A stretch of 64,000 bases of DNA from Heteronotia binoei (taxonomy: Eukaryota). The first letter of the stretch is position 1; the number at the start of each line of letters is the position of its first letter. Of this stretch, positions 9,545-56,181 are shown in pieces. The DNA lies in assembly GCF_032191835.1 (NCBI RefSeq), contig NC_083235.1:57412001-57476000 (forward strand), given 5' to 3'. The notes under the pieces are model-generated. The model saw only the letters and a program-made list of their open reading frames with translations. It ran no database searches and was not told where the DNA came from. A program made the position numbers and the translations under genes.

Positions 9545-9545
9545 C

Positions 9546-9563
9546 TGGCGACAAAGGTAGGAT
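9546..9563 (+). other. Primer-binding site, probably tRNA-Ser(GCT)
   Basis: TGGCGACAAAGGTAGGAT matches TGGCGACGAGGATGGGAT (the tRNA-Ser(GCT) 3' end as I recall it) at 14 of 18 positions. Confidence 0.7.
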
Positions 9564-9567
9564 ACCG

Positions 9568-10203: not shown

Positions 10204-10315
10204 CTCGCAGAGTTCATATTGTGGGAATTTCAAAAGAATCCAGCGCAGATCATGGGGTGGGCCAGAGTTAGGATGGAGTTCAAAAATTTTAAAGGGGTTC
10301 TAGACCCCCACTCTT

Positions 10316-12163: not shown

Positions 12164-12167
12164 TCGG

Positions 12168-12530: not shown

Positions 12531-13585
12531 GTACGCGCAGGAGTCATCGGAAGCATTCTTATTCCAGATTTAATGTACTATCAAAAAAGTCCGCGTCTCA
12601 GTCGTGGCAGTTCGGGACATGAACAAGCCAACGACCATTGCCAGATGCTGATGTTTGGACAACCGCATAAAATCCGACATGCATCTGGCTTTCATCCATG
12701 CCCATCTCATCAGTTTATGTGCGTCTGACCTCGGCCCTGGAGTGGCTGTTGCACCCTAGGCCTCCCTTCCCACATACTGTGTTTTAGACTACGTGCTCAA
12801 TCCTTCAGAGGAGCTATGTAATATACAGTTAAATATATGTGCATGCAAAATGCATATTTTTCTTTGCTTCTGAAAAAAATGATGGTATGTTGACCTGCTC
12901 TGGTAACATTACTCTACATGTAAAAAGGTAATCACAACAAAGATGTTACTGTGAGCCAGTTCTAATCAGAGACAACTAGTCAAGCATAACAAGAGGCAGT
13001 TCTGGGTTGGGGTGTGCAATGCATCTCCATGCTCATCAAAAGGTGTACTCTTCAGTGTGCCCCAAGTGCATGTAGCAATGAACATAGACATTTACATCTA
13101 GTTATGCATTTACATCCACATCACAGATCATCTTTGCTTGCTTTTCCTTGATTATTCAGGGCATTTGCTTTTTGAGGGGGGTGGGGAGGCATTGGCAGGT
13201 CTTTAAACTTTCTTGAAAAACTTCACACCATGGAATGCTGAAATAATGCCACTAATTCCCCACTCTCTGCAGGAATCCTCAATTTTAACTGATAGATTTT
13301 ACGAGAGTTTAGTTTAGAGCAGGATAATCTGTGATTTTCTACTGCTTCTCCCTGCAAGGGCTTGGAATGGAGAGGCATTGTTTCTTTAACGCTTACAAAT
13401 ATAGCTTCTGGTTTCTTGGTGCGGAAAAGAATAGCTTATGTTCCTTCTTAGGAAATGGACGTAGTTTGGAAGAACTATAGCCAGTGCCAGATTTAGAAAA
13501 AACAGGCCTAGCCCTGCCCCTCGCTGCTCTGTCAGAGGCAATGGCCTCAATGGTACACAGGAGGGCAGGGTATAGTAGAGGAGAT

Positions 13586-19310: not shown

Positions 19311-19445
19311 GAGAGACTTGTGGCTCAGTGATAGAGCATCTGCTTTGCATGCAGAAGGTGCTAAGTTCAGTCCCCAGCATCTCCAGCTAAAAGACCTTGG
19401 AGAACCACTGCCAGTCTGAACAGGAAATACTGACTTGCCGCTTCA
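19311..19445 (+). mobile_element. tRNA-derived SINE, Squam2-like, internally deleted
   Basis: tggctcagtgatagagcatctgctttgcatgcagaagg..aagttcagtccccagcatctccag. Confidence 0.6.
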
Positions 19446-19629
19446 CGTTGTCACACCTTTAGCATGCCATGTGGCCCATTCAGAATCTGCCTAACCTTTG
19501 TTAGCCAAAGAAACTTTTAATCTTCAATTATTTTAATTAATAAGTGCATATATATAATTGTGCCTTGCTTTAGTGCACCTTATATCTAAGGTTTTCTGTA
19601 CTTAGGCAATTATACCTTGCTTTTCTCTC

Positions 19630-20085
19630 CACTCAAAGAAGCCTGCATCATTCTGCCCTTCTTCATTTTATCCACATGACTGCAGCCCTGTGAGGTAGCT
19701 CAGCATGAGAGAGACAACGGGCGTTTTCGCACTGACCTTAATCGGCAGCGACGCCCCTCTTCACTGTGCAGGATCTGCGCGGATTTTGCGCCAATTGCCG
19801 CGGAGCACCCGGAAGAGCCGCAAAGTCCCGCGGCTTTTGCAGCGCGAATGGAAACCGGTTTCCATTTGCGCCGCAAAAGCCGCGGGACTTTGCGGCTCTT
19901 CCGGGTGCTCCGCGGCAATTGGTGCGAAATCCGCGCAGATCCTGCGCGGTGAAGAGGGGCGTCGCTGCCGATTAAGGTCAGTGCGAAAACGCCCAATGAC
20001 TGGCCCAGGATCCCCCAGTGAGCTTCCATGTTAGGGTACAGATTCAAACCTGGGCCTCCCAGATCCTCATCCAGCACTCTGACCA
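19630..20085 (-). mobile_element. Older tRNA-derived SINE, split by the palindromic MITE
   Basis: ccctgtgaggtagctcagcatgagagagaca | atgactggcccaggatcccccagtgagcttccatg...gattcaaacctggg is continuous across the insertion. Confidence 0.65.
19719..19994. mobile_element. 276-bp fully palindromic MITE, probably PIF/Harbinger-type
   Basis: 138-bp arms with no spacer, centred at 19856/19857. Ends are GGGCGTTTTCGCAC...GTGCGAAAACGCCC. There are 6 arm mismatches and 3-bp flanks AAC/AAT. Confidence 0.9.
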
Positions 20086-21062
20086 CTGCAACAAGTTGCA
20101 GGCAGCATCCTCACATCAACTTCCTGAAGAAATTCTTCCCTTTGTATACATATGTAATGAAAGCTAGGAGGGGTGTGATTCACAGAGACATCCATTCAAG
20201 CCCATAGCTAACCAGGAGCCCATGGGGCCTGGCCACCTGACAGGTTTTTTGGGGACCCTCACCCTCTTCCCATGGCCACCTCCTCCTATGTGATTTAAAT
20301 TGTACCACTGCCTCCCCCGTGCCATTTAAAGGGCCCACCAATCAGCTGATCAGCAGGCTCTTTAAATCACACAGGAGGGAGAGAGATGCCCCCCAGCATC
20401 TACAGCTTCCTGCACTCACCCCCATGGGCCTCTCCCCTGTGGCCCTCTCCCTCTGTGGCCCCTAGCTACAGAGCTGCATCCATTTAAGGCTGTGGTCCTA
20501 AAAATGCTTTCCTGGGAGTAAGCACCTCTGAATAAAATGAAACGTACTATTCAGTAGACCCGCTTAGAATTGCTCTGTAACACTGTCATTGTCTTGCTAA
20601 AAACAGCCTGTGAATGCATGGATGAATCAGGTCTTGAACTTGATTCTCACAGAGACAACAGAGCCCTCTTCTCTAGCTGGGCCAGGCCCTCTGTAACCAG
20701 TCTGCATGACGGAGGGTTATGACATCATGCCAAGGGAGGATCCAGCCCCCAGGTTGGAAAAGTGGTTTATCTTTATCCCATCATAAGTTTTTTTCCTGCT
20801 CACAGTTCTAACTAAAAGGTTGGGATGGGGTTGTACTTTTGTGTGGTTTTTTTGGTCAGGAAATTTTCTTCTCTGAAAAACAAGCTCTCATTCTTAAAAA
20901 GGAAACTTTCATGTCAAAAATTAAAGGCCTTTAAAAAAAAAAAGTCTTAGATGAGACAAAATAGTATTCCATGTGCACCCACTGGCCCCTCCCTGACAGC
21001 CACGTTCCTGACCTTCTGGGTGGGCATAGAGAGCTTTCTTCTTACCTTATCCCTGCTGCTGC

Positions 21063-23240: not shown

Positions 23241-26003
23241 CTAATAACCACTGATGGACCTCTGCTCCATATTTTTATCCAATCCCCCCTTGAAGCTGGC
23301 TATGCTTGTAGCCGCCACCACCTCCTGTGGCAGTGAATTCCACATGTTAATCACCCTTTGGGTGAAGGACTTCCTTTTTTCCGTTTTAACCTGACTGCTC
23401 AGCAATTTCATTGAATGCCCTCGAGTTCTTGTATTGTGAGAAAGGGAGAAAAGTACTTCTTTATCTACTTTCTCCATCCCACGCATAATCTTGTAAACCT
23501 CTATCATGTCACCCCATAGTCGACGTTTCTCCAAGCTAAAGAGCTCCAAGCATTTTAACCTTTCTTCATAGGGAAAGTGTTCCAAACCTTTAACCATTCT
23601 AGTTGCCCTTTTCTGGACTTTTTCCAATGCTATAATATCCTTTTTGAGATGCGGTGACCAGAATTGTGCATAGTATTCCAAATGAGACCGCACCATCGAT
23701 TTATACAGGGGCATTATGATACTGGCTGATTTGTTTTCAATTCTCTTCCTAATAATTCCCAGCATGGCGTTGGCCTTTTTTATTTCAATCACACACTGTC
23801 TTGGCATTTTCAGTGAGTTATCTACCACAACCCCAAGATCTCTCTCTTGGTCAGTCTCTGCCAGTTCACAACCCATCAACTTGTATTTGTAGCTGGGATT
23901 CTTAGCCCCAATGTGCATTACTTTGCACTTGGCCACATTGAACCTCATCTGCCACGTTGACACCCACTCACCCAGCCTCAACAGATCGCTTTAGAGTGCC
24001 TCACAATCCTCTCTGGTTCTCACCACCCTGAACAATTTAGTGTCATCTGCAAACTTGGCCACTTCACTGTTACTCCCAACTCCAGATCATTAATGAACAA
24101 GTTAAAGAGCATGGAACCCAGTACTGAGCCCTATGACACCCCACTGCTTACCATCCTCCACTGCCCATTTACACTCACTCTCTGCTTCCTATTAATTAGC
24201 CAGTTTTTGATCCACAAGAGGACCTGTCCTTTTACTCCATGACTCTAGAGCTTACTAAGGAGCCTTTGATGAGGAACTTTATCAAAAACTTTCTGGAAGT
24301 CAAGGTAAACAACATTGATTGGGTTCCCTTTGTCCACATGTTTGTTCACCCCCTCAAAGAACTGTAACAGGTTAGTGAGGCAAGATCTTCCCTTATAGAA
24401 CCCATGCTGAGTCTTCCTCCATAACTTGTGTTCATCAATGTGCCTACTCATTCTGTCCTTGATACTGCTTTCTACCAACTTTCCCAGTATTGAAGTCAGA
24501 CTGACTGGCCTGTAATTTCCTGGATCTCCTCTGGAACCCTTTTTAAAGATGGGGGTGACATTTGCTACCTTCCAGTCCTCAGGAATGGAGGCAGATTTCA
24601 ATTCAAGATTACATATTTTTGTCAGGAGATCCACAAGTTCAACTTTGAGTTCTTTCAGAACTCTTGGATGTATGCCATTCTGACCTGGTGACTTATTAGT
24701 TTTTAATTTGTCAATCAGTTGTAGGACCTCCTCTCTTGTCACCTCAATCTGACTCTGGTCTTTCAACACTCCTTTCAAAATTAGTGGTTCTGGAGCAGGC
24801 AAACACTTCTCATCTTCCACAGTGAAGACTGAGGCAAAAAATGCATTCAGCTTCTCAGCCATTTCCCTATCCTCCTTTAGTAATTCTTTTACCCCTTTGT
24901 CATCCAAGGGCCCCACTGCCTCCCTGGCTGGTTTCCTGCTTCTAATATATTTGAAGAAATTTTTATTGTTGGTCTTTATGTTTTTTGCAATATGCTCCTC
25001 ATAGTCCCTTTTCGCCTGCCTGATCACAGTCTTGCATTTGATTTGCCACAGCCTGTGTTCCCTTTTATTAATCTCACTTGGACTAGCTTTCCACCGCTTA
25101 AAGGAGTCCTTCTTACCTTTTACAGCTTCCGCTACTTTGTTTGTTAACCATACAGGCCTTTTCTTATACCTGTTTGTGCCTTTCCTAACTTGTGGTATAT
25201 ACTTTATCTGAGCTTGTAGGATTGTAGTTTTAAATAGCCTCCAAGCTTCCCCAAGGGTTTTGACTGTATTTACCTTTCCTTTCAATTTCCTCTTCACATG
25301 CCTCCTCATCTCAGAGAATTTACCCCTTTTAAAGTTAAACGTGGATGTTCTGGTCTTTTGAGGCAACTCCCTATTTATACAAATGGTGAATTCAATAACG
25401 TTATGGTCACTGCTCCCAAGTGGTGTGATCACTTTTACATCTCTCACCAAGTCTTGGGCATTACTTAGGACCAAATCCAGTATCGCCCCACCCTTGATAG
25501 GTTCTGTGACCATCTGCTCAACAGCACAGTCATTGAGAGCATCTAGAAACTCAATCTCTTTCTCTCGACCTGAACACATATTGACCCAATCAATCTGTGG
25601 ATAGTTAAAATCACCTATTACGACACAGTTTTTCCATTTAGCCACTATCTTTAATCCTTCCATCGTATTATAATCATCCTCTATCTTTTGATTTGGTGGG
25701 TGATAACAAACTCCCATAGTTAAATTTCCTTTTGGGCCCACTATTTCGACCCATAGCATTTCTAGAAGGGAATCTAATTCTTTGACCTCAGTCTTACTGG
25801 ACTGTGACATACAGAGCCACCCCACCTCCAACCCTTCCCTCCCTATCCTTCCGATATAACTTATATCCAGGAATCACCGTGTCCCACTGATTCTCCTCAT
25901 TCCACCAAGTTTCTGAAATTCCCACAATGTCTATGTTTCCCCCCAACACTAAATATTCCAACTCACCAATTTTACTTCGAACACTTCTAGCATTTGTATA
26001 CAA
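23241..26003 (-). pseudogene. CR1 ORF2 (AP endonuclease and RT), frameshifted
   Basis: YTNARSVRSK, IVGISETWW, VIGDFNYP, LGSSDHN, GIHPRVLKEL, PGNYRPVSLTS, YLDFQKVFDKVPH, WQMRFNVAKCKVMH. Confidence 0.95.
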
Positions 26004-31175: not shown

Positions 31176-32530
31176 CCTCATCTGACATGCAACATGGGCT
31201 GCCTTTTCATATTTGTTATATTTTATATCTTCCCTCCTTTCATTTTGCTCAAAGGCTTCCACTCAGGACAACCATCACCCTGTCTGCCTGATGCCCCAGG
31301 GCTGATGTGTTCTCTTCTTTTATGCACACACACAATTGGGGGGGGGGGACAAGTTCAATTCGTGCATTTGGCCACTGGAGTCTATCTGCTCAGGAGGCTT
31401 TTGGCTCCATACTGGCTCTTGCATACCAGGACAGGGTGACTCCATGGCCACCACTGGTTATGCAGTCAGCACGCCTAGCCTTCTGCTGTCAGCACAGAGA
31501 CATCCCTGGGGGAAAGGTACATGCCTTTCCTAGGGAGATATCCTGCACCTGCTTTGGTGTTACACAGCAACACCTAACCAGCAGCTGCTCTATGGACATG
31601 TCCTTGGGGAGGGTCAAACTATTCTCTCGCTCTCTTTGTACTTTCTAAAGAAGGTTGGCTACTAAGACAAAGTTTAAGAACTGCTGATCCAGTTCTTTTC
31701 CTCCCCTCCAAGCTGCTTATCTGTCCATCAATTGTCTACATCTGTCTGCTGTTTTATATAATATTTAGATTGAGAGCTTCTGCAGTGTGAATAATGTTAA
31801 CCAACAGAGGTGCCCTTTATGTAGGGCAGAGGGGACAGACCTGATCCCAGTCTTGTCTTTCAGACCATGTGTGCTCAGACTCCAGGAGTGCTTCTGTCTC
31901 AGCCCTATGCATTGCAATGATAAACCAGCAGATGAATGTTATTCATTGGATTTATACCCTCACTCTACTCTTGTCTAAGACACAGTTCGGGGGAGGGGGT
32001 CTCCTGGACAAGTAGGTTACCAATTTTAAACCCTCTAAGCTGTCCCTTTAATAACAGTTTCATCTGCAGCAGTTATCAGGTGGTTATTAGTGAAATGTTT
32101 CAATTACCCATTCCTGCATATTAGCCCTCTATTAAAGAGACAGAACATTTCCCACCCACCCCAATCCAGCTAGTTGACAACTCTACTCACAAGCTTCATT
32201 CAAATGAGCAAGAACATATTCCAGTGGATTGTGCTGCAAAGAAGCAATTCTCAAATCCTTTACTATAAGATTGTCTCATATACCGGTCCATTGAAGTCTG
32301 TGTATTACTTCTGAAATGCTTAAGATTGTAATCCGGGTGTAACTGATCCAGATGCTGACATTTGTCAAGACAGGAGCAGGGCAGACCTACCATTAGGCAG
32401 AGTGAGGCAGACCACCTCTGGCAACAGTTTTCAAGGTACCATTAAATCTGAGCAAATTACCAGTTACTTTGTTTTATGATGTTTCATTATTTTGTGACGG
32501 GTAAACTGGAGGACTGTGGACTATAGGATA

Positions 32531-32754
32531 TTAGGGTTTGTAGAATCTTTCGGGCTCAAGTGCCGTGTTCTACTGGAGAAAGTTTTTCTTCCAGACGTTT
32601 CGTTCTCAGCTGCGGAGAACATCCTCAGTGGCGTTGCAGCTGAGAACGAAACGTCTGGAAGAAAAACTTTCTCCAGTAGAACACGGCACTTGAGCCCGAA
32701 AGATTCTACAAACCCTAATGATGTTACCAGCCGTGAAAACCTGAAATCTTTGAT
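32531..32754. mobile_element. Penelope-like element pseudo-LTR fragments in inverted arrangement
   Basis: 84-bp perfect inverted repeat with a 22-nt spacer, a hammerhead core and a ccgtgaaaacct terminus. Flanked by GACTATAGGATA (32519-32530) / GACTATGGGATA (32755-32766). Confidence 0.82.
32591..32631 (-). ncRNA. Minimal type I hammerhead ribozyme motif
   Basis: CCA-CUGAGGA-U-GUUCUC-(CGCAGCU)-GAGAAC-GAAACGUC-UGG. This gives a 3-bp stem I, the catalytic core, a 6-bp stem II, a palindromic ACGU stem III and a GUC cleavage triplet. Activity is not shown by sequence alone. Confidence 0.8.
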
Positions 32755-34075: not shown

Positions 34076-34290
34076 GCTGTGAGATTGTGACTCAGTGGTA
34101 GAGCATCAGCTTGGTGAGACCCAGGTTCAATCCCCAGCATCTCCAGTTTAAAGGACCAGGCAGTAGGTGCACCGATTTGCACCAATGACTGGAGAGACCT
34201 CTGCCTGAGACCCTAGGGCACTGCTGCCAGTCTGAGTAGACAATTCTGATCTTGATGGACCAAGAGTCTGATTTGATGTACGGAAGCCAG
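34076..34290 (+). mobile_element. tRNA-derived SINE, Squam2-like
   Basis: gactcagtggtagagcat...ggttcaatccccagcatctccag...ctgctgccagtctgagtagacaat..gatggaccaagagtctga. Confidence 0.75.
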
Positions 34291-35400: not shown

Positions 35401-37725
35401 ACATCAGAACGAGATTATCATTTTTCTCGCTTGTTACCTAATCATATTGTCTCCTTCTTGGTCTTCAAAGTTTTAGAAAAGATCTTAGCCTTGCAGAGAA
35501 AAGGGCAGCTTTTTGTTTCTAAAAAAACTAATTGTGTCTGAAGACATACATCTTGTTCCAGTTTAAACTTCAAGAGTATGTTTGGGATTATTTTTCCTCC
35601 CCCTAAAATTAAACTTTTATTGACCCATTTAATCTGCAGAAACAACCCAGCAGAGATTCAGGGCAGACTCCCTGCCTTCTGCAATAAATTTAGAACTGGA
35701 GGGGCCATCGAAGTGTGTTGTAGCCACTCATGGTTTTACCCACTGGTTTCAGTAAATCATGGTTGAAGTTTAGCCCTCAAAGCCTGGTCCTTATATCTTC
35801 TGGTTTAATCCCATAGATGTCCCTGTGGGTGTTTTGGCAGTTAAGAACTGCCCCCCCCCCCACCCAAATGCAAGGAAAACAAAAGAGAAGTCTTGTGGCA
35901 TCTCAGAGATGAATGTATTTATTACGGTGTAAAGCTTTTGTGGATCATCAAGTACATGAAGTGCATCTTCAAGAAGCATATAGATAGACAGGAAAAATTA
36001 TAAACTGGATTCAAAAAGCAACAGAATATAAGAGGTACAGTCTATAGGACATTTCTTTTATGCAAGGATCTTTTACATACAAGGTAATCAAAGTGACAAT
36101 TCACTATCGCAATAATGGGTGATAACACAATAATCACTCTGGGATTTTAAAAAATTTGGTTGCAAATGCTGGGAAATGGCAGGTTTTAAGTTATTCAGAA
36201 CTTTTTGCCGGGCATTTATTTTACTTTTACCTCTAGGGAATTTATCCTACTTTTGCCTCTAGGTTTGGCAGGTTTTTAATATTGTTTCAAAACCCTGCCA
36301 CACTGGTTTGACCAAGTGTGTGCATATAATGTGGGACATAAAGGACATTTCTTTTAAATGATGGTCTATTCCTAGCCTAAATCGGCCTGAGTTGAAGTAC
36401 TAGAGGACCGCTGAGCAAGAGGCTTTTGCAGCAGATTATAACCATACAAACTGTAGATTAACGTAATGGGTTTAAACAACATCCAAATACATTGTATTGT
36501 GTATTCCTAGTTGAGGGTATTCTCTCCCCTCACCTCTTTCACAAAGTTTGAAACCATATTTTCATACTGCTATCCCAAATACGTGTTATCTGGAAATAGT
36601 TCCTGTTGAGTTCTATAGAACTTGCTAAGGGCCCCCCATTCAAGGAATTCAAAGTGCTCTCCTTTCAAATATGCTAGTTTATAACTACAGTGGAACTATT
36701 TTGGGATTGGATCTGCAAATGAGTCCAGAGCTTTATCATACAGTATTTGCTTTACTTGGCCTCATAATAACCCTGCAAGGTAGGCCATGACAGTCTCCAT
36801 TTTAAAGATCTGAAACTGAAACAGGATCTTGACCCAGGGGCATCCACTGTGTCTGCAAAGGATTCTGGAACTGGTCCAAGGTCTCCCTGGTCAGGCCAGG
36901 CCAGTGTACCATTCAGTGCGTGCCAGAGTGGCCTGTTCATAGCTGCCTCCTCAAAACACGTATCTCAGAGTAGCTCCCAGAGAAGCATTGTTATTTCAAG
37001 AGGACTATATATTTTAATTATTTATTTCTATAGTATGTATCCATCCTATGACTTTAATAAGTACACAAGGTGGCTTATGAAGAAAGGTAATGTCAATAAA
37101 AAGGAAGAAAGACCAAAAACAGCTGAAACTGGTGTGGGGTAGGGATTAACAATGATTTCTGGTTTGAAATCCAGTAGTGCTGCATTCTGGGAAATCTAAT
37201 GTTGCAGGGCAGCTCCAACATGAGTCCATTAAAAACAAAGTGATTTGCAAAGTGAAGTGAAGCCTATGGTCTATCAGTTTCTCTGTCAGTTTTTTGTTAC
37301 TGCAAGATAATTGTACAGAATATTAAGAAACCTAAACAAAATTTGCTACATATACGCAAGGCACAATTCTATCATCCAAGCTCAAACGACAGCCCTTGTT
37401 TCTAAAGGAGAGTGTGTGGATATGAGATGCAGTATTTCCTTTGAACATTGAGTGGCTAGAATGAAATATGGCATACAAGTTCAGGACAACATTCTGCATT
37501 GTAAAGATCAGCACAGCTTGACCCCCTCACACAAACTTTTTTTCTATGGGGGGGGTGCTGAGAATGGCTCGTTCCCATCTCATTCTCCATATGAAATGTG
37601 AAAACTTGTTCTGTTTGCAACCCTGTTCAAAGGAGAAACTATGCAAAATACATAGCAATACAATATATGCCTCAGATATTGGGATAACGGAGTGAGGATT
37701 GGGAAGCGCATGCAGGAAACGTGTC

Positions 37726-37919
37726 CAATGTCCCCTCTAAGCTGCAGAGTCCTGTGAGCAAAAATTCTACTTTGTGAGCTACTGGTATTAAAATTGTGAG
37801 CTACTGCATACATTATTGTGCTCTGCAGTTATCCTTCCCGAGCTAAGACAAAAATGTGTGAGTCGGAGGCTAAAAATCTGTGAGCTAGCTCACCCCAACT
37901 CAGCTTAGAGGGAACACTG
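37726..37919. mobile_element. hAT-like MITE (CAGTGTTCCCTCTAAGCTG TIR)
   Basis: 19-bp TIRs with 2 mismatches and a decayed 8-bp TSD AACGTGTC/AACATTTC. Confidence 0.78.
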
Positions 37920-38049
37920 AACATTTCTAAATTTCATCTTCAAACATGAGCTCAGTTCCCACATGGTTTTCAAGAGAGGCAGGAGCCAGTGAGGCTGACT
38001 GTGCTTTATGATTTTACTAAAGTATCTTTTTTTTCCCTTTAAACAATAC

Positions 38050-38900
38050 CCAGTGAATCGACAGCCGTCTCCTCTGCATCTTCCTCCAGCTAGCAAGAAA
38101 GGCCAGGGGGGAAAATGAAAGTTTCCGAAGTCTGCACACCTAAAGACCGCCTGAAACCGCCCAGTCTTCCTGAACCTGGCCAGCACAGCTCCACACACCG
38201 AGACACAGGAGGAAGGGCTGGGAATCCGGGGGCTTCCCCGCAGGAGCAGCTGATGTGTTTGTGAGGTTTCCTTGGTGCCTGTTTAGGGCCGGCCAACTGG
38301 GCTCAGGATCCCTGCCTGCGGGGACGATGATTTGGGGAGGGCAAGAAGAACGACAGGAGAAGCTGCCAGAAGCTCCCGGCCGAGGGGACCGCTTGCCTTC
38401 TCGGGCAAGAGCGGACAAGTCGACAGGCCTTTCCTCAGCCCAGGGGAGGAGGGCTGTTGCAGGCTTGAGCGGGAGATGCTGCCTGCCTGCCTTGCGGGGA
38501 CGGGGAGCGAGGGAGGCGGGCGGTCAGCTGCGGCTTGGCTTTCTCGCCGCCAGGGGTGTGAAAGGGTGAACGGGCTCGGAGCGCTCTGGCAGCCCACCCG
38601 GCGGCCTGGAACCCGGCGAAAGCCACATTCTTCCCCTGCCTTGGCCGCCAGGCAGCTAAGCGCCGCAGGGCAGGGCAGGGCGGGGCGGGGAGGAAACTGC
38701 CGAGGGATTCCGTCGCGGAGCCAACAAGCTGCATCTGTTGTGCCGCACAACAGCCTGGAAAGGCTCCATCCACGCCCTCGCTTCCCCTCGCATCCCGCGA
38801 CGAACCCGAAGCGGAGCCCTTTCAAAGAACGCGGGATGTGCAAACGGGACATCTCAAATTCCAGCGGCGCTTGCATGCGAAAGAGCATGCATGTGCGTGC
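38050..38900. promoter_or_regulatory. CpG island 1
   Basis: High GC content and dense CpG against a CpG-depleted background, with GGGCGG boxes. Confidence 0.85.
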
Positions 38901-39679
38901 AAATCCACGGAGAGGGAGCCATGAAAAGGGGAGAGAAAAGGGAATCCAGGTGCGGGGGGTAGGTGGGGGGGGGCGGTGTTATTGCCTCTCCTCGGTCCTC
39001 AAAGGAAATAAGTCATCAGCTAATCTGCAACCCCTGGGTGTGGTGGGGTCTCTCTTTGTGTTCTGGAAGCAGATTTCTTTGAGCGAGCTGAAGCCAGAGA
39101 CGAGGAGCCTAATGCGTACTGTCGAGATTTTTAGAAGGATGTGGTTTATATGAGAAGCGATTCAGCTGAGCTCCGTACAATGATGTCCAGCGCATATCTG
39201 TATCGGTAGGTCGGTAGATAATGGGAGTATTAAAATATTTTTAATTCCACCTTCCTGCACAAGTGCCTTGGAGCAGATATCTGTCTATCCATCTAGCGAG
39301 CCCAAACATGTTATATTTGCATAGACACAATAAATAAACTCAAGCACTCAGCGCAGGTTTATGTAATAGTGCGTTAACCTGACTGGGTTCCTCCGTCTGT
39401 GAATCCACCAGCGTGTAGTTCTGTTGCTAAAGACAAATATAGGCTCAGGTCTTGTGTGTGTGTGTGTATATATGTATATATCATAAAGAATGGGTCTATG
39501 AGCTGGTAAAAGGGGCATATTTTCAGGCAGGTAGACAGCACCAGGTGAGGACCTCGGCCCTCAGCCAGCTGTAAGTAGGGGCCATTGCCAAAGGTGGGAC
39601 CGAATTCTAAATGGTTGGGTCGCGGCTTGCTTTTGGATGCCCTACAGAGAAAGTTAAAAGCGCCTCTATCATCATATCC

Positions 39680-41460
39680 CGTCGATTTCTAACTGGAAGC
39701 CCACCGTTCGAATTCAGATCAAAGGGACTCACAGCGCTCGCCTCGGAGGGCAACCCGCCCCCCCCCCCGCGGCCTTGCTAAAAATGGCTTTCTGAAGGGG
39801 AGGGGGGGGCAATCTGTTCCAACGCAGTCCCGCGCGGCTCGACTCCAGTCGCAGCTCCCTGAAATCTGCTGGCTCCGAACGGCCTAACTCTGGCTAGGAT
39901 CTCCCCCTCCCGCCCCCGGGTTTTGTAGGTACCGCGAGATGCCTCCTGCTTGCCGCCACTGGGCCCGAGAAGGGGGAGAAGCAACGCCAGCGCCGCCAAG
40001 TTTGCGGCGTCCAGCGAGTCGCTCTCCTCTGCCCCCTTCCCAAGGACGAGGCAGCCGTCCCACCAGCCTGCTGCTGCCGGGAGCCCAAGGCTACCTGCTG
40101 CTGCTGCTGCCGCCGCCGCTGCTCCGCGTGGTTCCGGCTGCGGCCCTTCCTCGCCGCGCCCGTCAAGACGCCGCCGACCTCGCCGCTGCCGGCTGCCAGA
40201 CACCGGGGCGGGCGGGAGGGGGGGGGGGGGGTTGGCTGCAGTCCAGCCGCTGAGCGCGCAACGCGCACACACCCCCACCCACATACACCCACAGCCCCGC
40301 AGGCCGCTTCAGGCTCCGCGCCGTTCCCCCTCGACGGCCACAGAGGTCAGGCGCGCTCGGATCCCGGCAGCCTCCCCGGCCCGCTTGGTCAGGCGGCGGA
40401 GGCACCCAGCGGGGACTCTCCAGGCCCGCCCAGCCGCCCTCGGGGAAGCCCCAGCCAGCCCGCCGCTCTTCCCGCCCGCCCCCTCCGGGGAGCGCTGAGC
40501 TGCGCTGGCTGGCCCGAGACACCCCCCCCACCCCACCCCACCCCCCGTCGCCGCTGCTTTGTCTGCTGGGCCGGCCCGAGGCCCCGCCCGCCCGGCCCCC
40601 TGGCCTCGTCGAGTGGAGAGAGGAGCCCGCTCAGCTCCAGCCGTGACCCTCCGCGAGGCCGCCAGGCCTTTGTTTGCCCGGGAAGCCCCCCCCCCTCCTC
40701 TCCCCCGGGTCCTTTGTGTGGCTGGCTGCGCAGGAGACGCTTCCACCGGCCCCGTCGAGGAAGCCGCCCACAAGCAGACTCCGGCGGCGCCTTGCGAGCA
40801 GAAGCCGTGCAGCGGCACGAGAGGCCGCGAGTTGGTGTGCAATCCAGCCCCCCCCCCCTTCCCTGAAAGCTCCCCGGGCTTTGGGCTCTTTCGCGGGGGG
40901 GGGGAGAACCATCAACACCCCCCCCCCCCGGGTTTCCCTGCTCGGCGTCCCCGGGAAGGTGGCTCTCTGTCTCCACGAGCGGGAGTTGGGGAGGGATGGC
41001 TCCCGCCTTAACGCTGCTGCTGCTGCTGCTCAAGCGAACGGTGCCCCTTCGAGCCTTCCTTCGGCAGCTCCTGCAAGCCCGCTTTGCTGCTCCTTCGAGG
41101 ACAGGCGGCGCCGGCCAGCGACCTTCGGGCCTCGGCTCCAGCAATCGCGGGGAACGCGCCGGCCGCCCTCCGCTCGCCTGGCCTCCCGAGGCCTCTCGCT
41201 CCGTTTCAGTGGCCCGGCTGGCGGCTGCAGCGCGTCTCGGCCCCCGCTGCAGAGAAGCGCCGCCGCCGGCCGCGGGAATGGAGCATCTCCCCGCCTCCCT
41301 CGGGGCCCCCGGTTGCCTCGGCCCCCCCCCCGTCTTCTTTTCGGACTTCAAACGTTCTCTCTGGTCCTGCCACAACCGTTTGCCTTCGAAAAGCACAAAC
41401 ATCCCATTTGGCTCCGCGTAATAAAATCAGTCGGAGATCCTTAAACGCTGCCATTCCGCT
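39680..41460. promoter_or_regulatory. CpG island 2, likely a promoter or non-coding first exon
   Basis: Very GC-rich and CpG-dense, with G runs and (CTG)/(CCG) repeats. No recognisable protein domain in any frame. Confidence 0.9.
40095..40123. repeat. (CTG)5(CCG)3 trinucleotide tract
   Basis: Visible directly in the sequence. Confidence 0.95.
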
Positions 41461-44400
41461 GAATTAAGTTGTGAAATCTAATCTATTATATCCATAAAGG
41501 AAAATGCTTTCGTTGTAAATTCCGGTTATAAAGAAAATTCTACCTGGAGCAGTCAAGTTTCTCTCCGCGGCCCCCCATGTCCGCCCCCCCTCCCCTCTTC
41601 GGATTTGCTACTTGATGGCTTATCAAATTACTTCAAAACGCCCCCTCTCCCCCCTTTTTCCATATCTCATTGGAACCGAAATTAAATGTGGCAAGACGTT
41701 CCTTTTAACAGCTTGAAAAGGTCATAAACTGGCAGCAACAACACAGGAAAGGGAAAAAAAAAACAACACAAAATTATCCGAGCTTTTTGCAACTGAGGTT
41801 CTGCGATTAATTTGGACCCCCAAAATTATATATTTCTTCCCAACAACGAAGGCATGCGGAACGACAGCAGAGCTGTGCCGAGGCTGGGCTCCAGCCCGCC
41901 GGCCTTCTGGGCAGACGTGGAGCTGAGAATCTGCCGCGATCCCATCCCACGGAAAAAAAAAAGAGGGAAGCGAAAGGGAAGCCGTCTGAAAATGAATCTA
42001 CTCTTCTGGAGGCTGCACTGGCGGAGATTTCAGTAAGAGCATCGTTTTTAAAAAGGCTCCAGCAATTCCTCAAACACAGAGAGGGTAATATGTGCATATA
42101 ACACCGTTTGCTTGGGTTTTTTTTTTCTTTTCCGGCTGGTGGGGGGAGGGGGGACAGAAAATGGACCCATCGCCGATTAAATATCGGAGGGAGTACAAAA
42201 TAATGCTCCGGCGCTGACTTTATCCAGATCAAAAAAAAAAATCCCCTCTTTAAAAAAAAATGTGAGGACAAAACCCAACAAATGCATCGTAGATTAATTG
42301 ATTATATTTTAGCTTTCAAAAGAAATTTAAAAATACAAGACGAAAATACCCCCCCCCCCCCAAGGACTTGGTAGCTCTAGGCCAAGGAATAGGGACAAAA
42401 AGAATTACTATAAAGCATAACCGCCTAAAGTTTCGCTATGACAGGGAGGAGAGGTGGGTGGAAGGAAAGGGGGGTGGGGTGACTCTAGGATGTAGCTTTG
42501 TCAGATCTTGGGAGAAAGATTTATTAATGTGTGGCTAATGTCCCCAGTGTTATATCCTCCTAAAGCCCTGCCCGATTTCCTAGTCTAATCTTTTATTTCC
42601 ATCTAATTATTTTTTCCCTGACACTTCTCATCTCAGCGTCTTTAGAATTGGGGGGGGGGGTGTGTAAAAGGGAGGGGAAGGCATGCAATATGGACTCAAC
42701 AAAATCTCTAGAGTGTTCTCCCAGCACTGGAAAACTGAACGTCCCAATCCCTGAGACCGAAAATTAACAAGGGCTTCTCAAAGTAAACCCAGTACAATAC
42801 ACAAACCCGGAAGGGAAGGGAAGGGTGGGGGGAGAGAGAGATCTTAACTCAAGAGGTACGGATGGGGAGTCGAGGACGGTTAGCTAATACTTCACATAAG
42901 GAAAATAAAAAGTGTGGGGTAGTGGCGAGGGAACCCTTCAACGACGGTTGGGTTTCAGCAATTATTTTTCCTAAAGAATTACAGCGCTACAAACGTTTTT
43001 CAGTTGTAAGTATATAACAATGAAAATGGAGAACGGTCAGAAGAGAAAGCTCTTCTGAAATCTAGCGTTTGCAGGGCAACTTCACCCACCCAGCATTCTT
43101 GTTGCATGATTCCGAATAATGATGATGCAACAACAAACGGGAGAAAACAAGAGTCTATATTTATTTTTAGCTGTACTTAAAAGAAAGCAGTCCATTGATC
43201 GCGGGATTGGGGGCGGGGGGGGGGGGAGAGAAAGAAAGAAAGAAAGACCCAATTTTGTTGGACGCAGAGGAGCAGAAATTTGGAAGTGGAAAAGAAAAAA
43301 ATAAACAAACCTGAAAATGTCCGCTAAAATGAAAACGTTCTTCTCTTACTTATTCGGAGAAGTCCTGTTGATTTCCGTGGGACACCCAGTAAACAGATTT
43401 AGGTCTACAGCTTTTTTTTTTTTTAAGACACCTGGCCGAATTAAATGACCAAAATTAAGTCTATAAATGCACAGATATTTTTAAACTATGGACACAAATT
43501 GGAAGGGTGTGCAGTGCATAAACGAAAACCAACGTAATTGCAGAACTGGGATTTCCTGCAAAAATTAATCTACCGAGGGCCCTCCCCGCCCCACCTTATT
43601 GGAATCGGACTTTTTATGGGTTGTTTAGCTTTAGAGGTCTTGTGTATTTGAAATGGAACTCCCGGATAAGGGCACTGCCATGGCCGGATTTTTAAAGTGC
43701 ATGTTTGGCTAAAATCTTAATTATCACATCCAACGCCTTTCTGTTGCTATTATCAAGTTACAATCGATTTTAGCCTTTTAATTACGAGTCTGTCTCCCCC
43801 CCCCCCTCCACACACGCACACATAGCATCATAAAGTTATATTGAATATTTGCTGATTTCAAATCGGAATTTCCCACGCCTTTAGGAAAGACAGGGCACAA
43901 CGCTAACATTTGCTGGGCTATTTCTATAGTCATTGTTCGGCCAGTCATTACCATTTTTATTCATGAAAACTTGGAAGAAAAATATTAAAAACCGTGGATA
44001 GCTTCTATAAAGCTCTTGTCAGGATATTTTGGGTGGCTGCTGCATCTTATACATTTTAAACCTTTAAAACTGATCGACTTTTTAAAACTTGAAATAAATC
44101 AAGTTGTATCTCTTGTCTCAAATGTATTCTCTATAAATTTAGAAAATCTAGAATTTGTTAAACGTTTCAAATGTAAATTGCGTTTTATTCACTGTAACAG
44201 AACCTGAGTTTTCTTTTTTTTAAAAAAATCCTTGTGTCCAGTTCTTTGTTTTGCACAATACATTTCCTTCATATATTAACAATGTCTTTTATTTTCTAAA
44301 GTTTGCTTTTAAAATTCAACAGAAAAATCTGAAAATTATCAGTTGCATAGAACTGTTTTTAAAGATCAAATGGTATAGGGGGGAAATATAAGACCAAATC

Positions 44401-45329
44401 GAACCAGGTGCCACCTGGGTCCAAGTTCTGCCATTTATTTATACCTCATTGACAAAATATAATTAATAGTAATATTATTTATATTATGATGGAAAATTAA
44501 GTGCCAGTTAGCCTTTCCTAAATCTAGACTGAAGGACTGTTTTTCTTAGCTCAGTGGATTATAATAATATCCTCTTTTAAAATTCTCAAAAATCGAACGT
44601 TTAAGTCTATCTCGAGCCCACATTTTAAAGAATTTTTTAAAAGAGGGTTTTAAAAAAGGATTTTCTTATTTCCATAATTAAGACTAGAACAAAGGATTTA
44701 TTAGAATGCCTTCCTGTGGATTAAGCCATATGTGGACTATTAAAACCCTGCAATTCTGTTTGGAATTATTTCGCACTTGAATATAGTACCGAAATACCGT
44801 CCATTCGTTTTATTTATTTATTTATTTATTTGCTTCATGCTTTGTCTATGTGCATTTAGGCAGAAAATGTGGTGTAATGGCCAGTCTGGCCTTTTTGAGC
44901 GCTCCACCTTTTTTTTCAAAACTGGCAAGCAATCTAGTTTAATGTATTGTTTTGTCTTTCAAGAAGATTTATTTCTAGATTAAATAAAATATGCGGATGA
45001 AAGGGTTGATAGCAAAAATCACAGGACTGGGGGAAAGAAATCAGAGGGAGGGGGGAATAAACCACATACCTCAGATCCAGAAAGCCAGGCCTTTTCCCCA
45101 GAGAACTATGGGGGTGGGGTGGGGGGGGAAGAGCCTGTCCACAGTGTTTTGTTTCTCCTGCCTTTCCCTACCCATAGACACACACACACACATCCCTTCC
45201 CCCAACAAAACATGAAAATTCAATGCTGATCTTTTTTTTTTCCCCTCTGCAAGCCGGGTAGGCTTGCTTCCTCGCTGGGATATTGCCTCTGGCCAAAATA
45301 TTTTACAACCTCAGCTGGGAGGTGGGGTA

Positions 45330-46760
45330 GGCAGCAGCATATAATTATATGCGATCCCTCTCCGTTCCCATCACCCACGTGTTTTTGCAGTCCCCAATCT
45401 TCGTACATCCGGGTCTCTGGCTCGCCGTGCCTACATTCTCCATGGCTTTCCGTTCGCGGCTGGCAGCAGGAAGCTAGAGCGGGCGCCGCAGCTGAGATGT
45501 CTCCTCCGATGCCGCTCCTGCTTCCGTGCATTCCTCGGTGCAGCGACCGCAGAGCTCCTTATCCAAGCTTCGAAGCACAAGCGCGCAACTCCTTGCTCGG
45601 CGACAGCGGGTCCGTTTCCCCTTAGCTACTTGAGGAAGCAGATTCCCGAAAGAAGAATCAGGAAAGAAGATCTCCCCCCCACCCCAGTAGTCGGAAAAGG
45701 GGTGACTCTCCTCCCCAGCCACAAACAGAACCTCCTTGCTCGGCGATCTTCGCAAAATCCTAATGTTCTTTCCTGCCAGCGCTTCCTCCGTCGCCCGGCT
45801 GAGTCCTACAAACACCTCCTCCCTAGTTCATCCACCAGTCGTTCCTTCTGTGCAGAATTCGGCTTCCCTCCTGCTCCGGCCCCCCCTCCCCCCGCCCGTC
45901 TCCTGCAGCCATCCTCAGCAGTTGCAGTGCATTGTAGAGCTCCGGATCCATGCCTGCCTACTTCAGGGCCAAGAGAGAGAATTACACCGAGACGTATGTG
46001 GTATAATAGATCGTAATAAATAATGATCTACAGTGGAGGCTGCCCGAGAGTCTTCGCTGCCCGGCTCTGCTTCAGGTCTCACCCCCAGGGAGAACGAAAC
46101 GAGAGAAGCAGCCACGGAGCTGGGGAGAGGAGCGCCCGGGGCGGGGGAGGAAGGGAGGGAGAGGGAGAGGGAGGGGGAATCAAAAGGAGGGGGCATCTTC
46201 TGGAAAGTCTCTCTGGCACCCGCCCTTCCCCCACTCTTGTCGTTTTAATCAATGGGAACTCCTCTGCCGTGCCTCTTTTAAGGAGGCACGGATCTCTCTC
46301 TCCCCCCCTCCCCTCTTAGTTCGGAATAAAGGCGGTATTTACGACACCAGCTCCTTTCCGCCCTCCCGTCGCCCCAGCTGAAAAAGACCACCTCAGATCC
46401 CATCCCATCTTCCTCTGGCGTTCCAATAAATAAAAGAGAGAGATCTTTTCTTCTCGGTCCAAGGCCCTGTTCTTCCCCAAGAGCGGCGCGTCCCCCTTAA
46501 ATCCCTGCAGCCTTCTTTCTGCCCGCAGAGCCGCTCTCGACCAATCAGAGAAGCGCTTGGCCTCGCTTGAATGACTCTTGTTCTTTGTTTGCGGAGGGCG
46601 GATCTCTCCAATCTGATCAAGGGGAAGGCCCAGCTGTTGGAATCTCCGCAGCCAATCAGCCGGCAGGCTTGCCAGGGCGTGCTGTGCTCCAAATGCTGGC
46701 CTGCCCGCTTGCCTGAGCTGGGGTGTCCGCCTGAGCGGGACTGAGATCTCCCGCTCCCTG
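45330..46760. promoter_or_regulatory. CpG island 3, likely a promoter and 5' UTR
   Basis: CpG-dense with purine/pyrimidine tracts, adjoining a CCAAT cluster. Confidence 0.85.
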
Positions 46761-46860
46761 CTTATTTATACTGGCCTTTCAAACTCAACTCATCCAAGGA
46801 GCTATTAGGCTGTCTGTCTGTCTAGGGCAATAATGTTTGAATAGGCCTTCCAATCTGTGA
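46420..46860. promoter_or_regulatory. CCAAT-box/GC-box core promoter cluster
   Basis: CCAAT at 46423, 46531, 46608, 46652 and 46850. Two sit in full NF-Y context (GACCAATCAG, AGCCAATCAG). GGAGGGCGG at 46593-46601 and AT-rich TATA-like words at 46496-46503 and 46762-46770. Confidence 0.7.
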
Positions 46861-49800
46861 CCGTTTAAACAAGGACCGTTTCAAGGAAAGGCGTATGATT
46901 GATATTTCAAATATGCCTCTTAAAACAGGCAACGCCGCCAGGTTACAAAGGTAATCTGGGCTGAGCGCAGGTCGTCTTTATAGCCGCGCACTCTACTTGT
47001 GACCTTCCGGCCTTGGGCTGAACTCCCGGGTTGTTGTAAACAAGAGCAGAAAAACTTGCCCGCGCTCTTTTCTCTGGATTTTGAAGGGGAATGTCAGCTC
47101 AAAATCAATCCCACTCAAGAATATAACAAGTTAAGAGAGCTGTTAACATTTCAAATTAAACCTATCAGTTCTGGGGAAGTTTTTAAAGCTTCACCAGATC
47201 AAACTAGGCAATGACTTTAGTGTATCATCTGTTTTTCTGGATTAATTAATCTTTTGCTGAATTAATCAGTGGGAACAAAAACTATGACATTTAAACATAG
47301 GTGCCATGTTCATAATATCAAAGATCAACTTTAAAAATCTTTTAAGGAGCTAAGATTTTTAATGTTGAAATCATTTTGATAGACTCATTTTGAAATTTTC
47401 TTTGGGGAAGGGATCCCTATGATTATAGTCTATTTTTTCTTAGATTAATGAATGAATCCATTAATTCAATCAATCAAGGAGGCTTTTAACTATAGTTTGT
47501 ATCATCACTTCTCTGCTCTTAGTTGCACATTACAGATGGGGGTCAAAATGACTTACTAAAGGTCACATAGTGAGAAGATGAGGTTTGAACAGTAACCTTC
47601 CAGATTACACCACATTCCTCTTAGCTTTTGTTCTCCAGTTTCTAAAAGCCACAAATAAAAAATGTATCAGATCAAACTTCACATAAATCCTAAGTCATAG
47701 CACACTGGGGATATGAGTGGCTCCTACAAAACACCCTCTAACCAGGGACACATTTTATGCTGGGAGGGGGGCTCCTTTATGTTTAGACTAGACATGATTA
47801 TTTCTCAGATGCCCCTGTGCCAGTGGACAATTCAACCGTAATAACTGCTGTTGTAAAATATTGCATGAGGTTATGAACCAGATATGCATGCCAAAGGCAC
47901 AAATATGAAAGATTTGGGTCGATATTATAGTTTTATTAGGTATAAAAATAAAAGCACAACAAATCTCTTAATGAATTCTCAGTCTACCTTTGCATTCATT
48001 CATTCAACAGACCTCGGGGAACTTTCTGAATCTTGTCACTTCACTTAAATCTCCACACTCCCTGCTGCAATCCCCTCCTGCGAAGGCCAGCCAATTGGGA
48101 TTTCTGAAAGGCCTCTTAACAAGTTGTGTGTTGCTTCTGAAAGAAATATGTCTTGGTCCGGCATATGAGTCCTTTTTTGTTTCTGCTAACATGTAAACTC
48201 AAGAGAGTGCAAGCTAACCAATGCAGAGCAGTCTTTTGGATATCCTAAAGGATAGTTAGATGCTTCCCTGTCTATTGCAGTCAATGGGATTTGAAAAGTA
48301 ATTCTGCTCATGGCACTGTAAGTCCCTTGTAATGCTTTCACTCAGGGCCTATAAAACATATATGGGGTTAAGAGGGAATCCTCCTCCTCTAATTGGCCAT
48401 TAAACCCCTCCCCCCAGTAGCATTTTGTAAAAGGTTTGAAGGGAGACACACAAAACCAAGCCAGCTGACCAGTGTTTTAATAGTATTTTTTTATTTCAAG
48501 GCTATGCCATGCATGTGCACACTCCAGAGCTCATTGGGAATAAGTGGCAAAAGGTTGTGTTGACAACTGAGGGAAGAGGAGAGGGAGAAAGATGAACAGG
48601 AGAAAGTTATAGGTTTCTTTCTGATGAAGCAAGGGCTATTTTAGAGATCTTAAAAAAAAAAAAATCAGTGGTCCTTACCCTTCCGGAACTTTAAAGCTAT
48701 TGTATGATACCAATACTGTGATAGGCAAAGGCATAAATAGAATACGTGCTCCAGTCCCTTTCTTTTTTTCTTTTTTTTTTGTGCACAGAAATTATGTCCT
48801 TACTGTTCGATGACAGGAACATTATATAGTTTTGGTTTTTTTAAAGGACTTGATGTGACTCAGCTAAGATCATGTGCTGGTAATCAGAGATCTAGCAGGA
48901 GCCACAGTTTCAGAAACTATGCTGCACCTAGAATAAATATGGCAGTTTAAAACAACCTTAGATTTCTGCTAAGATTTTCTATTTATTATTAACCTAAATG
49001 TTTGCATTGGCATATTGACTATAATGCCACTGCAATGGCAGCCTGACATTTGATGACATTATTATGCTGGTTTGTCAGTTGGTAGCCTCATTGGAAGAAG
49101 CGCTCGTGTGCTGGCTCAGCAAGCTGTAGGATGGGGCTGTGCATGTGTGCATTGCTTCAGTGGTTAATTGACTTGCCCGATGGGTGGTCTTTTCTTAGGC
49201 AGAAATGTCATGAAGTTCAGTGACTCTTACTCCCAAGTTAGCATGCAGAGGACTACAGCCTGAATCTGAGAGATGTCATTTCCAAGCAAGTCAGGAGAAA
49301 GACCAAAGAGAAGAATGTAGTTGACTCCAAGAATTAAGAGACACATTTTTCATGTTGAGAATCTTGCCTAAGACAGAACTTGTTTGAACACTCTAGAACA
49401 GAACACTCACACACATCATGGAGCTTGCAGAATGATGACTAAAAATTCCAGCACATATCATGGGATCTGTGAGTGAAGCTAATTTTACAGTGTCACAAGA
49501 AGTTAATCTAATCCTTGTTTATATGCATAAACAAATGTCCACCAACTTCCATTGAACTTATTTTCTATTGGGAGTTTGCAGCCTTCCTAATGTAATTTCT
49601 TCATGCCTCTGTTACAGGCAGATTACTTTTTAACAACAGTATACTGCTGCTATAATCCTTTGTAAAATTCAAGACATGCAAGCAGGAAGAAGTCTATAAC
49701 TTCCCCAAATAAGGAAAATGAATGTTTTTTTAAATGTAGTACTGAATGTAGTCAGATTTCAAATTCTAATTCAGAATTTAATTTTGTGGTGATAAATCAA

Positions 49801-50661: not shown

Positions 50662-51228
50662 CAGGGGCATCAAACATCCAGCCATGGGGATGGAACTAAC
50701 CCATCCTGGGCTCTTATCTGGCCCATGTGAGTAACTGATGATCGTTATTGCCAGATGACAGAGGCTGTGCATTTTGTCCCTGCATAACGTCTCAGTGCTA
50801 ATGAGTAGTGGGCAATGGAAGTGGGAGGATGGGCATCAGGAGACGCTTTAGGGAAATACTATAAGAATGTTAATATTTTAAGCATGTTTGAATTTTGAGT
50901 AAAAACCAATATCATTAATTGGGTTTGCCCAAGTTCTTTATAAGAAGAAGATATTGGATGTATATCCCGCCCTCCACTCCAAAGAGTCTCAGAGTGGCTC
51001 ACAATCTCCTTTACCTTCCTCTCCCACAAGACACCCTGTGAGGTGGGTGGGGCTGGAGAGGGCTCTCACAGCAGCTGCCCTTTCAAGGACAACTTTTGCC
51101 AGAGCTATGGTAAAAAAGTTTATATCTCCAATACCTGGTATTACATTTTATGGCACACATGGGCTGGCCCCACAGAGTGATATTTATGTCAGATCCGGCC
51201 CTCATAACAAAACAGTTTGTCACCTCTG
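50662..51228. mobile_element. Old hAT/Charlie-like non-autonomous element, split by a SINE
   Basis: Ends CAGGGGCATCAAAC...GTTTGTCACCTCTG. Both flanks contain TCTA, but the TSD is poorly preserved. Confidence 0.55.
50943..51110 (-). mobile_element. Squam3-like SINE, 5'-truncated
   Basis: Matches the 3' ~170 bp of 845-1141; the tRNA-related head is missing. Confidence 0.9.
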
Positions 51229-55690: not shown

Positions 55691-56181
55691 TGTTTCCACA
55701 GATGGAATGATTTCCACTCATGGAGTGTGAAATTCTCATTTCCCCCTTCCTCCAAAATCCCAAACACCCCTGAAATTCTGTTTTGGGGGTCCCCTGCCCC
55801 CAGAGGCAGTACTTGGAAGAAGAAGATATTGGATTTATATCCCGCCCTCCACTCCGAAGAGTCTCAGAGCGGCTCACAATCTCCTTTACCTTCCTCCCCC
55901 ACAACAGACACCCTGTGAGGTGGGTGGGGCTGGAGAGGGCTCTCACAGCAGCTGCCCTTTCAAGGACAACCTCTGCCAGAGCTATGGCTGACCCAAGGCT
56001 ATGCTAGCAGGTGCAAGTGGAGGAGTGGGGAATCAAACCCGGTTCTCCCAGATAAGAGTCCGCATACTTAACCACTACACCAAACTGGCTTTCTTACTTG
56101 GGGGCAATTTGGGCTGTATCAAGAGGGGGCAGGTGAGAAAGTCATACTCTGCCAGTGGAAATAGTTCCATCTGTGGAAACA
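55691..56181. mobile_element. MITE with ~47-bp imperfect TIRs, split by a young SINE
   Basis: tgtttccacagatggaatgatttccact...agtggaaatagttccatctgtggaaaca. Confidence 0.7.
55817..56094 (-). mobile_element. Squam3-like SINE, full length and young
   Basis: Intact A and B boxes, a (CTT)n tail, and a 7-bp TSD TACTTGG (55810-55816 and 56095-56101). Confidence 0.92.

What the first reader, a model, noticed from the sequence alone, without database searches (positions are those of the whole stretch)
37920..47500. About 9.6-kb transposon-free, CpG-retaining block with no visible coding exon
Seen: I find no SINE, LINE or MITE between the MITE ending at 37919 and a MIR-like relic near 47500, although the flanks are repeat-dense. 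CpGs persist even in the AT-rich 41.5-45.2 kb interval and drop sharply after about 47060. Three CpG islands are present, yet no frame encodes a homeobox, bHLH, zinc finger, forkhead, HMG or other domain I recognise. Established: long germline-unmethylated, repeat-poor blocks mark Polycomb-regulated developmental loci. Inference: this is the multi-promoter 5' end of a long-intron regulator and/or a divergent lncRNA, and the main functional element of the window. I cannot name the gene.
Basis: partly seen in the sequence, partly recalled or inferred. Interest (0 to 1): 0.7.

Follow-up and report, generated by a model that had tools for sequence, protein, structure and literature searches.

The report
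Conserved CpG-rich non-coding control block
About 9 kb of gecko DNA has kept its CpG letters, holds no detectable jumping genes and encodes no protein; it is most likely the permanently unmethylated control region of an unnamed developmental gene or non-coding RNA, which is a real feature of a well-known kind.

Summary
From 37.92 to 47.06 kb the CpG observed/expected ratio is 0.73, against 0.17-0.25 in the flanks. The CpG-decay products TpG/CpA are not in excess (0.91 against 1.25). Even the 40%-GC interior keeps a ratio of 0.62. Three CpG islands pass the classical criteria.

I found no coding exon:
- Pfam matched none of the 113 open frames.
- There is no codon periodicity.
- No ORF is on record.
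- Three word searches found nothing.

I found no transposon signature: no in-window repeat, no LTR, and no terminal inverted repeat with a target duplication. No repeat library was available.

A 22-mer from the shoulder of island 2 hit one metagenome contig. By eye about 330 nt run parallel to the window, so one element is probably conserved in a distant organism. I take that contig for human contamination and did not align, save or search it.

A germline-unmethylated "methylation valley" is well supported.

This is a new member of a known kind, of low interest. Earlier notes on this genome hold no such block; the eight shown concern CpG-island DNA in or carried by hAT transposons, which I tested and did not find here.

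The parts
37924..47060 (.). CpG-retaining, repeat-free, non-coding block; a candidate DNA methylation valley
   Evidence: CpG o/e 0.73 and TpG/CpA 0.91, against 0.17-0.25 and 1.25 in the flanks. No in-window repeats. No Pfam domain in 113 frames.
38223..39165 (.). CpG island 1 (GC 62%, o/e 0.71, 62 CpG). G-rich on the + strand. Donor-like sites on + at 38950 and 39545.
39511..41500 (.). CpG island 2, the core island (GC 68%, up to 80% locally; o/e 0.80; 183 CpG). C-rich on the + strand. Many GGGCGG boxes and G/C homopolymer runs.
41350..41720 (.). Probable deeply conserved non-coding element at the right shoulder of island 2. It contains a TATAAAG at 41527-41533 (+). The 22-mer 41461-41482 matched a foreign contig exactly.
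   Evidence: similarity read by eye only, not computed. No excess RNA structure on either strand.
41450..45200 (.). AT-rich interior (GC 40%) that still keeps its CpGs (o/e 0.62, 92 CpG)
   Evidence: The longest frame here, 41810-42301 (-), has no relatives.
45225..46737 (.). CpG island 3 (GC 57%, o/e 0.68, 83 CpG)
46541..46950 (+). Candidate promoter and first exon. CCAATCAG boxes at 46541 and 46652, TATA-like TTATTTATA at 46762-46770, donor-like AAG|GTAATC at 46951. This is inference only.
   Evidence: Sequence read; donor score 7.5 bits.
37722..37923 (.). Short inverted-repeat element (MITE) that marks the left edge
   Evidence: pair I3: 23-nt arms, 87% complementary, 156 nt apart

Best explanation
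The block is a long stretch that has stayed unmethylated in the germ line over evolutionary time: a DNA methylation valley made of three CpG islands and a CpG-retaining AT-rich spacer. It encodes no protein.

It most likely works at the DNA level as the promoter and proximal regulatory hub of a developmentally regulated transcription unit. That unit would be either the non-coding 5' exons and alternative promoters of a gene whose coding exons lie outside this 64-kb window, or a long non-coding RNA.

Shown here: CpG survival without deamination products, absence of coding signal, no detected repeats, and one element probably conserved in a distant organism.

Inferred from established knowledge: dense unmethylated CpGs recruit CpG-binding, Polycomb and Trithorax machinery that keeps de novo methylation out, and transposon insertions are removed by selection because they would disrupt or methylate the regulatory architecture. 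Strand, start sites and target gene are not determined.
For: CpG o/e is 0.73 over 9.1 kb, and at least 0.40 in all eighteen 500-bp bins. TpG/CpA is 0.91 against 1.25 in the flanks, and the 40%-GC interior shows the same pattern. Three classical CpG islands are present.

There is no coding signal and no host exon anywhere in the window: all frames of 44 aa or more gave only transposon domains.

There is no repeat, LTR or TIR/TSD structure in the block, while about 22 repeat-like segments lie in the 55 kb of flanks. A rough Poisson estimate gives P about 0.025 for none in 9.1 kb.

An exact 22-mer hit landed in a foreign contig, with about 330 nt of visible parallel sequence.

Published valleys are at least 5 kb long, conserved across vertebrates, have low deamination rates and lie at developmental genes (PMC5806489, read). 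Target genes of long-range regulation carry several long CpG islands and widely spaced alternative promoters (PMC2688929).
Against: No methylation, chromatin or RNA data could be obtained. No gene could be named.

Core-promoter motifs are only consensus matches. Tested transcription-factor motifs gave no interpretable signal against composition-matched simulations: the interior reaches at most z 2.2, and the higher z values in the islands also occur in the flank and reflect mixed composition. Splice-donor asymmetry between the strands is not significant (P about 0.11).

Conservation rests on one contig of unknown species that I read by eye and did not align.

Valleys usually contain the coding body of a transcription-factor gene, and none is present here.
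Confidence: 0.65

Rival explanations
1. The block is a cluster of orphan CpG islands or poised enhancers. It has no stable transcript of its own and acts at a distance on a developmental gene outside the window.
For: No exon or gene lies within 38 kb to the left or 17 kb to the right. One element is probably conserved. Orphan islands are reported to boost poised enhancers (abstract of 10.1101/2020.08.05.237768, listed).
Against: From my own knowledge, orphan islands are usually short and single. Here a 2-kb island with 68% GC and 183 CpG sits with two more islands in a continuous 9-kb block, which is more typical of promoter regions. CCAAT and TATA arrangements are present.
Confidence: 0.15
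2. A short or unusual protein-coding first exon is hidden in the block: a few codons, a signal peptide or a low-complexity N-terminus. The block would then be an ordinary coding gene's 5' end.
For: Exons of fewer than 44 codons were not scanned as frames. ATG-to-donor candidates exist, for example 46913-46950 (+) and 46196-46083 (-).
Against: There is no codon periodicity, no Pfam match and no relatives or records. None of about 30 remembered N-terminal motifs of developmental regulators occurs in the window.
Confidence: 0.08
3. The CpG-rich DNA is young or transposed, not anciently unmethylated: for example, cargo of the Pack-hAT transposons that earlier notes report in this genome, or a recent insertion whose CpGs have not yet decayed.
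For: Earlier notes describe hAT elements carrying CpG-island cargo in this genome. The young Gypsy element at 9-13 kb also keeps CpG o/e 0.48.
Against: No terminal inverted repeat with an 8-bp duplication was found anywhere in 36-49 kb. There is no LTR pair and no second copy in the window. TpG/CpA is at 0.91 in the block, unlike 1.27 in the Gypsy element. One element is shared with a distant organism.
Confidence: 0.03
4. GC-biased gene conversion at a recombination hotspot built the GC- and CpG-rich segments, without any regulatory role.
For: Local GC is very high (up to 80%) with many G/C homopolymer runs.
Against: This cannot explain CpG retention in the 30-40%-GC interior, the lack of detected repeats, or the conserved AT-rich element.
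Confidence: 0.04

Closest known systems
DNA methylation valleys / canyons (PMC5806489)
   Same: The block is longer than 5 kb and continuous. It shows low CpG deamination, is built of CpG islands plus non-island DNA, and at least one part appears conserved.
   Different: Methylation itself was not measured. No transcription-factor gene body lies inside the block or anywhere in the 64-kb window.
Transposon-free regions / long unique regions at developmental genes (PMC11708210 and the earlier work it names)
   Same: About 9.6 kb has no detectable transposon between a MITE and a MIR-like relic, in otherwise repeat-dense DNA.
   Different: The block is just under the 10-kb threshold used for long unique regions. 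Absence of repeats was tested only within the window, not against a repeat library or the whole genome.
CpG-island architecture of genomic-regulatory-block target genes (PMC2688929)
   Same: Several long CpG islands are spread over kilobases, which would fit widely spaced alternative promoters.
   Different: No start-site data exist and no target gene was identified.
Orphan CpG islands linked to poised enhancers (10.1101/2020.08.05.237768)
   Same: CpG islands lie far from any recognisable coding exon.
   Different: By my own knowledge of orphan islands, this block is much larger and multi-island, and it carries promoter-like CCAAT and TATA arrangements.

Membership tests
DNA methylation valley | Mean methylation below 0.15 over a sliding 5-kb window (PMC5806489, methods) | not testable with these tools
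   No methylome is available. Only the sequence proxy could be used.
DNA methylation valley | Low deamination signature over at least 5 kb (sequence proxy for germline hypomethylation) | tested here: met
   CpG o/e is 0.73 and TpG/CpA 0.91 over 9.1 kb. All eighteen 500-bp bins are at least 0.40. Flanks are 0.17-0.25 and 1.25.
DNA methylation valley | Lies at a developmental or transcription-factor gene | tested here: inconclusive
   No host coding exon was found in the whole window. The locus was not named.
DNA methylation valley | Sequence conservation across vertebrates | tested here: inconclusive
   One exact 22-mer hit, with about 330 nt of similarity seen by eye in a contig of unknown and possibly human origin. 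It was not aligned. A second 22-mer found nothing.
CpG island (Gardiner-Garden and Frommer) | At least 200 bp, GC at least 50%, CpG o/e at least 0.6 | tested here: met
   38223-39165, 39511-41500 and 45225-46737 all pass.
Transposon-free region | No transposon-derived sequence over at least 5 kb | tested here: met
   No in-window repeat, transposon protein domain, LTR, TIR/TSD or tRNA-like SINE was found in 37924-47500. Limit: no repeat library and no whole genome were available.
RNA polymerase II promoter | Mapped transcription start sites | not testable with these tools
   No sequencing run was listed. Only motif matches exist.
Pack-hAT cargo element | Terminal inverted repeats flanked by an 8-bp target-site duplication | tested here: not met
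   There were 0 candidates in 36-49 kb. The 28-nt inverted pair 45192/47387 has no matching duplication (flanks read).
Known structured or long non-coding RNA families (Rfam) | A match at the family's gathering score | tested here: not met
   The block has none. The best sub-threshold hits are noise, for example HOTTIP_2 at 12.7 bits against a cut-off of 80.

The most novel reading that the evidence does not exclude
The block is a gene-less methylation valley: a deeply conserved, permanently unmethylated hub whose only product is an undescribed conserved long non-coding RNA, or no stable RNA at all. It sits tens of kilobases from any coding exon and is kept free of transposons in a genome where even CpG islands are moved about by hAT elements.
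Probability: 0.2. Interest if true: 0.4.

Novelty: new member of a known kind. Interest (0 to 1): 0.22.

Why it matters
The block marks where an important regulatory region lies in an otherwise repeat-filled 64-kb stretch of a gecko genome. It shows that the sequence-only signature works in a squamate: CpG survival, no TpG/CpA excess and no detected repeats.

It does not open a new question. Such valleys are described across vertebrates. Its practical value is as an annotation anchor, once the locus is named by alignment to an annotated genome.

Tried and rejected
Coding and gene naming:
- Pfam on every frame of 44 aa or more in the window gave only transposon domains. A TAFA hit at E 0.003 had no matching cysteine pattern.
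- About 30 remembered N-terminal motifs of developmental regulators were searched and none was found.
- The exact-sequence look-up of ten ORFs and three word searches found nothing.
- I did not use the large HMMER search or structure prediction, because nothing protein-like was left to test.

RNA:
- Rfam at gathering and at permissive thresholds gave noise only.
- The conserved element shows no excess RNA structure.

Strand and promoter signals:
- Motif enrichment was uninformative because the composition is mixed.
- GC and AT skews of the flanks give no clear strand.
- The donor and poly(A)-signal asymmetry is not significant.

Transposon test:
- The hAT-type end search found none.

Tools that gave nothing or were unavailable:
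- The look-up of sequencing runs: none was listed.
- Metagenome scans: one miss and one hit.

Full report
What the sequence shows

The window is vertebrate DNA. Earlier notes of this scan call the genome a gecko.

In 500-bp bins the CpG observed/expected ratio is mostly 0.0-0.3 across the window. It stays between 0.40 and 1.05 in all eighteen bins from 38001 to 47000, then drops to 0.28 and 0.11.

| Region | CpG o/e | TpG/CpA o/e | Note |
|---|---|---|---|
| Block 37920-47060 | 0.73 | 0.91 | 446 CpG |
| Left flank | 0.25 | 1.25 | |
| Right flank | 0.17 | 1.25 | |
| AT-rich interior 41450-45200 | 0.62 | 0.93 | GC 40%, 92 CpG |

The 92 CpGs in the interior are about three times what the flanks' ratio would give.

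A lack of TpG/CpA excess together with CpG survival in AT-rich DNA is the signature of DNA that has not been methylated in the germ line for a long time. It is not just a consequence of high GC. Three segments pass the classical CpG-island criteria: 38223-39165, 39511-41500 and 45225-46737. A small fourth lies at 41728-42096.

No coding exon

- I translated all 113 stop-to-stop frames of 45 aa or more in 37.9-47.6 kb and scanned them against Pfam. Two chance-level hits were the only result.
- Codon-position GC periodicity is absent. The mean spread is 0.07 in the block, against 0.23 and 0.15 in the Gypsy and LINE ORFs of the same window, which served as positive controls.
- None of the ten longest ATG ORFs exists in the 15-billion-protein collection.
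- Word searches found no relatives for the longest frame (345 aa, island 2, minus strand), a 288-aa frame in island 1, or the most complex frame of the AT-rich interior.
- ATG-to-donor candidates are few and resemble nothing I know.
- The rest of the window gave only transposon domains: Gypsy-type RT/RNase H/integrase at 9.5-12.7 kb, LINE endonuclease/RT at 23.2-25.9 kb, and other RT and SGNH fragments. No host exon that would name the gene lies within 38 kb to the left or 17 kb to the right.

No detected transposon

- A self-comparison of the window finds repeat families throughout the flanks and none between 35 and 50 kb.
- Inside 36.5-48.5 kb there is no direct repeat longer than 31 nt, so no LTR pair. 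The inverted repeats are short and low-complexity.
- The left edge is a 200-bp inverted-repeat element at 37722-37923 (pair I3).
- The sequence at about 47520-47600 resembles the MIR core as I remember it. I had no library to test this against.
- Counting about 22 repeat-like segments in the 55 kb of flanks, the chance of none in 9.1 kb is roughly 0.025. This is a crude figure.
- Earlier notes say this genome has hAT elements that carry CpG-island cargo. I therefore searched for terminal inverted repeats with an 8-bp target duplication around the block or any of its islands, and found none.

Conservation

The first 22-mer (42520-42541) found nothing. The second (41461-41482) hit one 1272-nt contig, L001. 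I read it once. It is vertebrate-like. About 330 nt around the match run parallel to window 41.35-41.72 kb, in the same order and on the same strand. The adjoining GC-rich DNA is not visibly alike.

This indicates a non-coding element conserved in a distant organism. Its species is not given. A vertebrate contig in an environmental metagenome is most likely human contamination, so I take it for human. I did not align it, save it or search for more of it. The similarity is a by-eye reading, not a computed value.

The element shows no excess RNA secondary structure on either strand (z -0.06 and +2.27). It therefore more likely acts as DNA.

How it most likely works

The best reading is a DNA methylation valley. 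Published valleys are at least 5 kb long, hypomethylated throughout development, conserved across vertebrates, have low deamination rates and are dense in regulatory sites of developmental genes (PMC5806489). Target genes of long-range regulation are spanned by several long CpG islands and use widely spaced alternative promoters (PMC2688929). The block fits the sequence side of both descriptions.

Candidate promoter features, all inferred from sequence:
- Island 3 has two CCAATCAG boxes (46541 and 46652), a TATA-like box (46762-46770) and a donor-like site at 46951 on the + strand.
- The conserved element has a TATAAAG at 41527-41533 (+).
- The best donor match in the block is at 39545 (+), at 11.1 bits.

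Against these, donor asymmetry between the strands is not significant (11 against 3, P about 0.11). GC skew changes sign several times. The flanks show no transcription-type skew. Motif counts are uninformative. I therefore cannot give strand, start sites or gene.

Rivals

- An orphan-island or poised-enhancer hub without its own transcript remains possible (0.15).
- A hidden short coding exon is unlikely (0.08).
- Young or transposed DNA (0.03) and biased gene conversion (0.04) are poorly compatible with the TpG/CpA figure, the AT-rich CpG retention, the missing transposon ends and the shared element.

Verdict

The kind is well known, so this is a new member of a known kind with low interest. 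The earlier notes of this scan hold no block of this sort. The eight CpG-island notes shown for this genome concern CpG-island DNA in or carried by hAT transposons.

Noticed in passing
window 9200-12800 (+): Gypsy-type LTR retrotransposon. It has a 619-aa open pol frame (RT, RNase H, integrase zinc finger) followed by an integrase-core frame. CpG o/e is 0.48 and TpG/CpA 1.27, so it is fairly young.
   Followed up: partly
window 23244-25873 (-): LINE remnant with a 542-aa frame carrying endonuclease and the start of reverse transcriptase.
   Followed up: partly
window 19314-20124: A tRNA-like SINE head at 19314-19385 (Rfam tRNA, 35.7 bits) has a related copy at 34081-34153. It sits next to a 276-bp near-perfect palindrome at 19719-19994 (95.7% self-complementary), inside a CpG-island-like 535 bp with o/e 0.87.
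   Followed up: no
window 847-1124, 50942-51110, 55816-56093: Three copies of a young repeat, 95-98% identical to each other.
   Followed up: no
window 32530-32719: A 190-bp self-complementary hairpin (92%) appears in the self-comparison. This is the place another note of the scan calls a hammerhead ribozyme in a hairpin. I did not test it.
   Followed up: no
window 38965-45128: Fifteen of the window's 24 G or C homopolymer runs of 8 nt or more (up to 14 nt) lie in the block, which is 14% of the window. They occur in the AT-rich interior as well.
   Followed up: partly
L001 1-1272: Metagenome contig Ga0126362_10039486 is vertebrate-like DNA of unknown species and possibly human contamination. 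It was read once and not analysed further.
   Followed up: no
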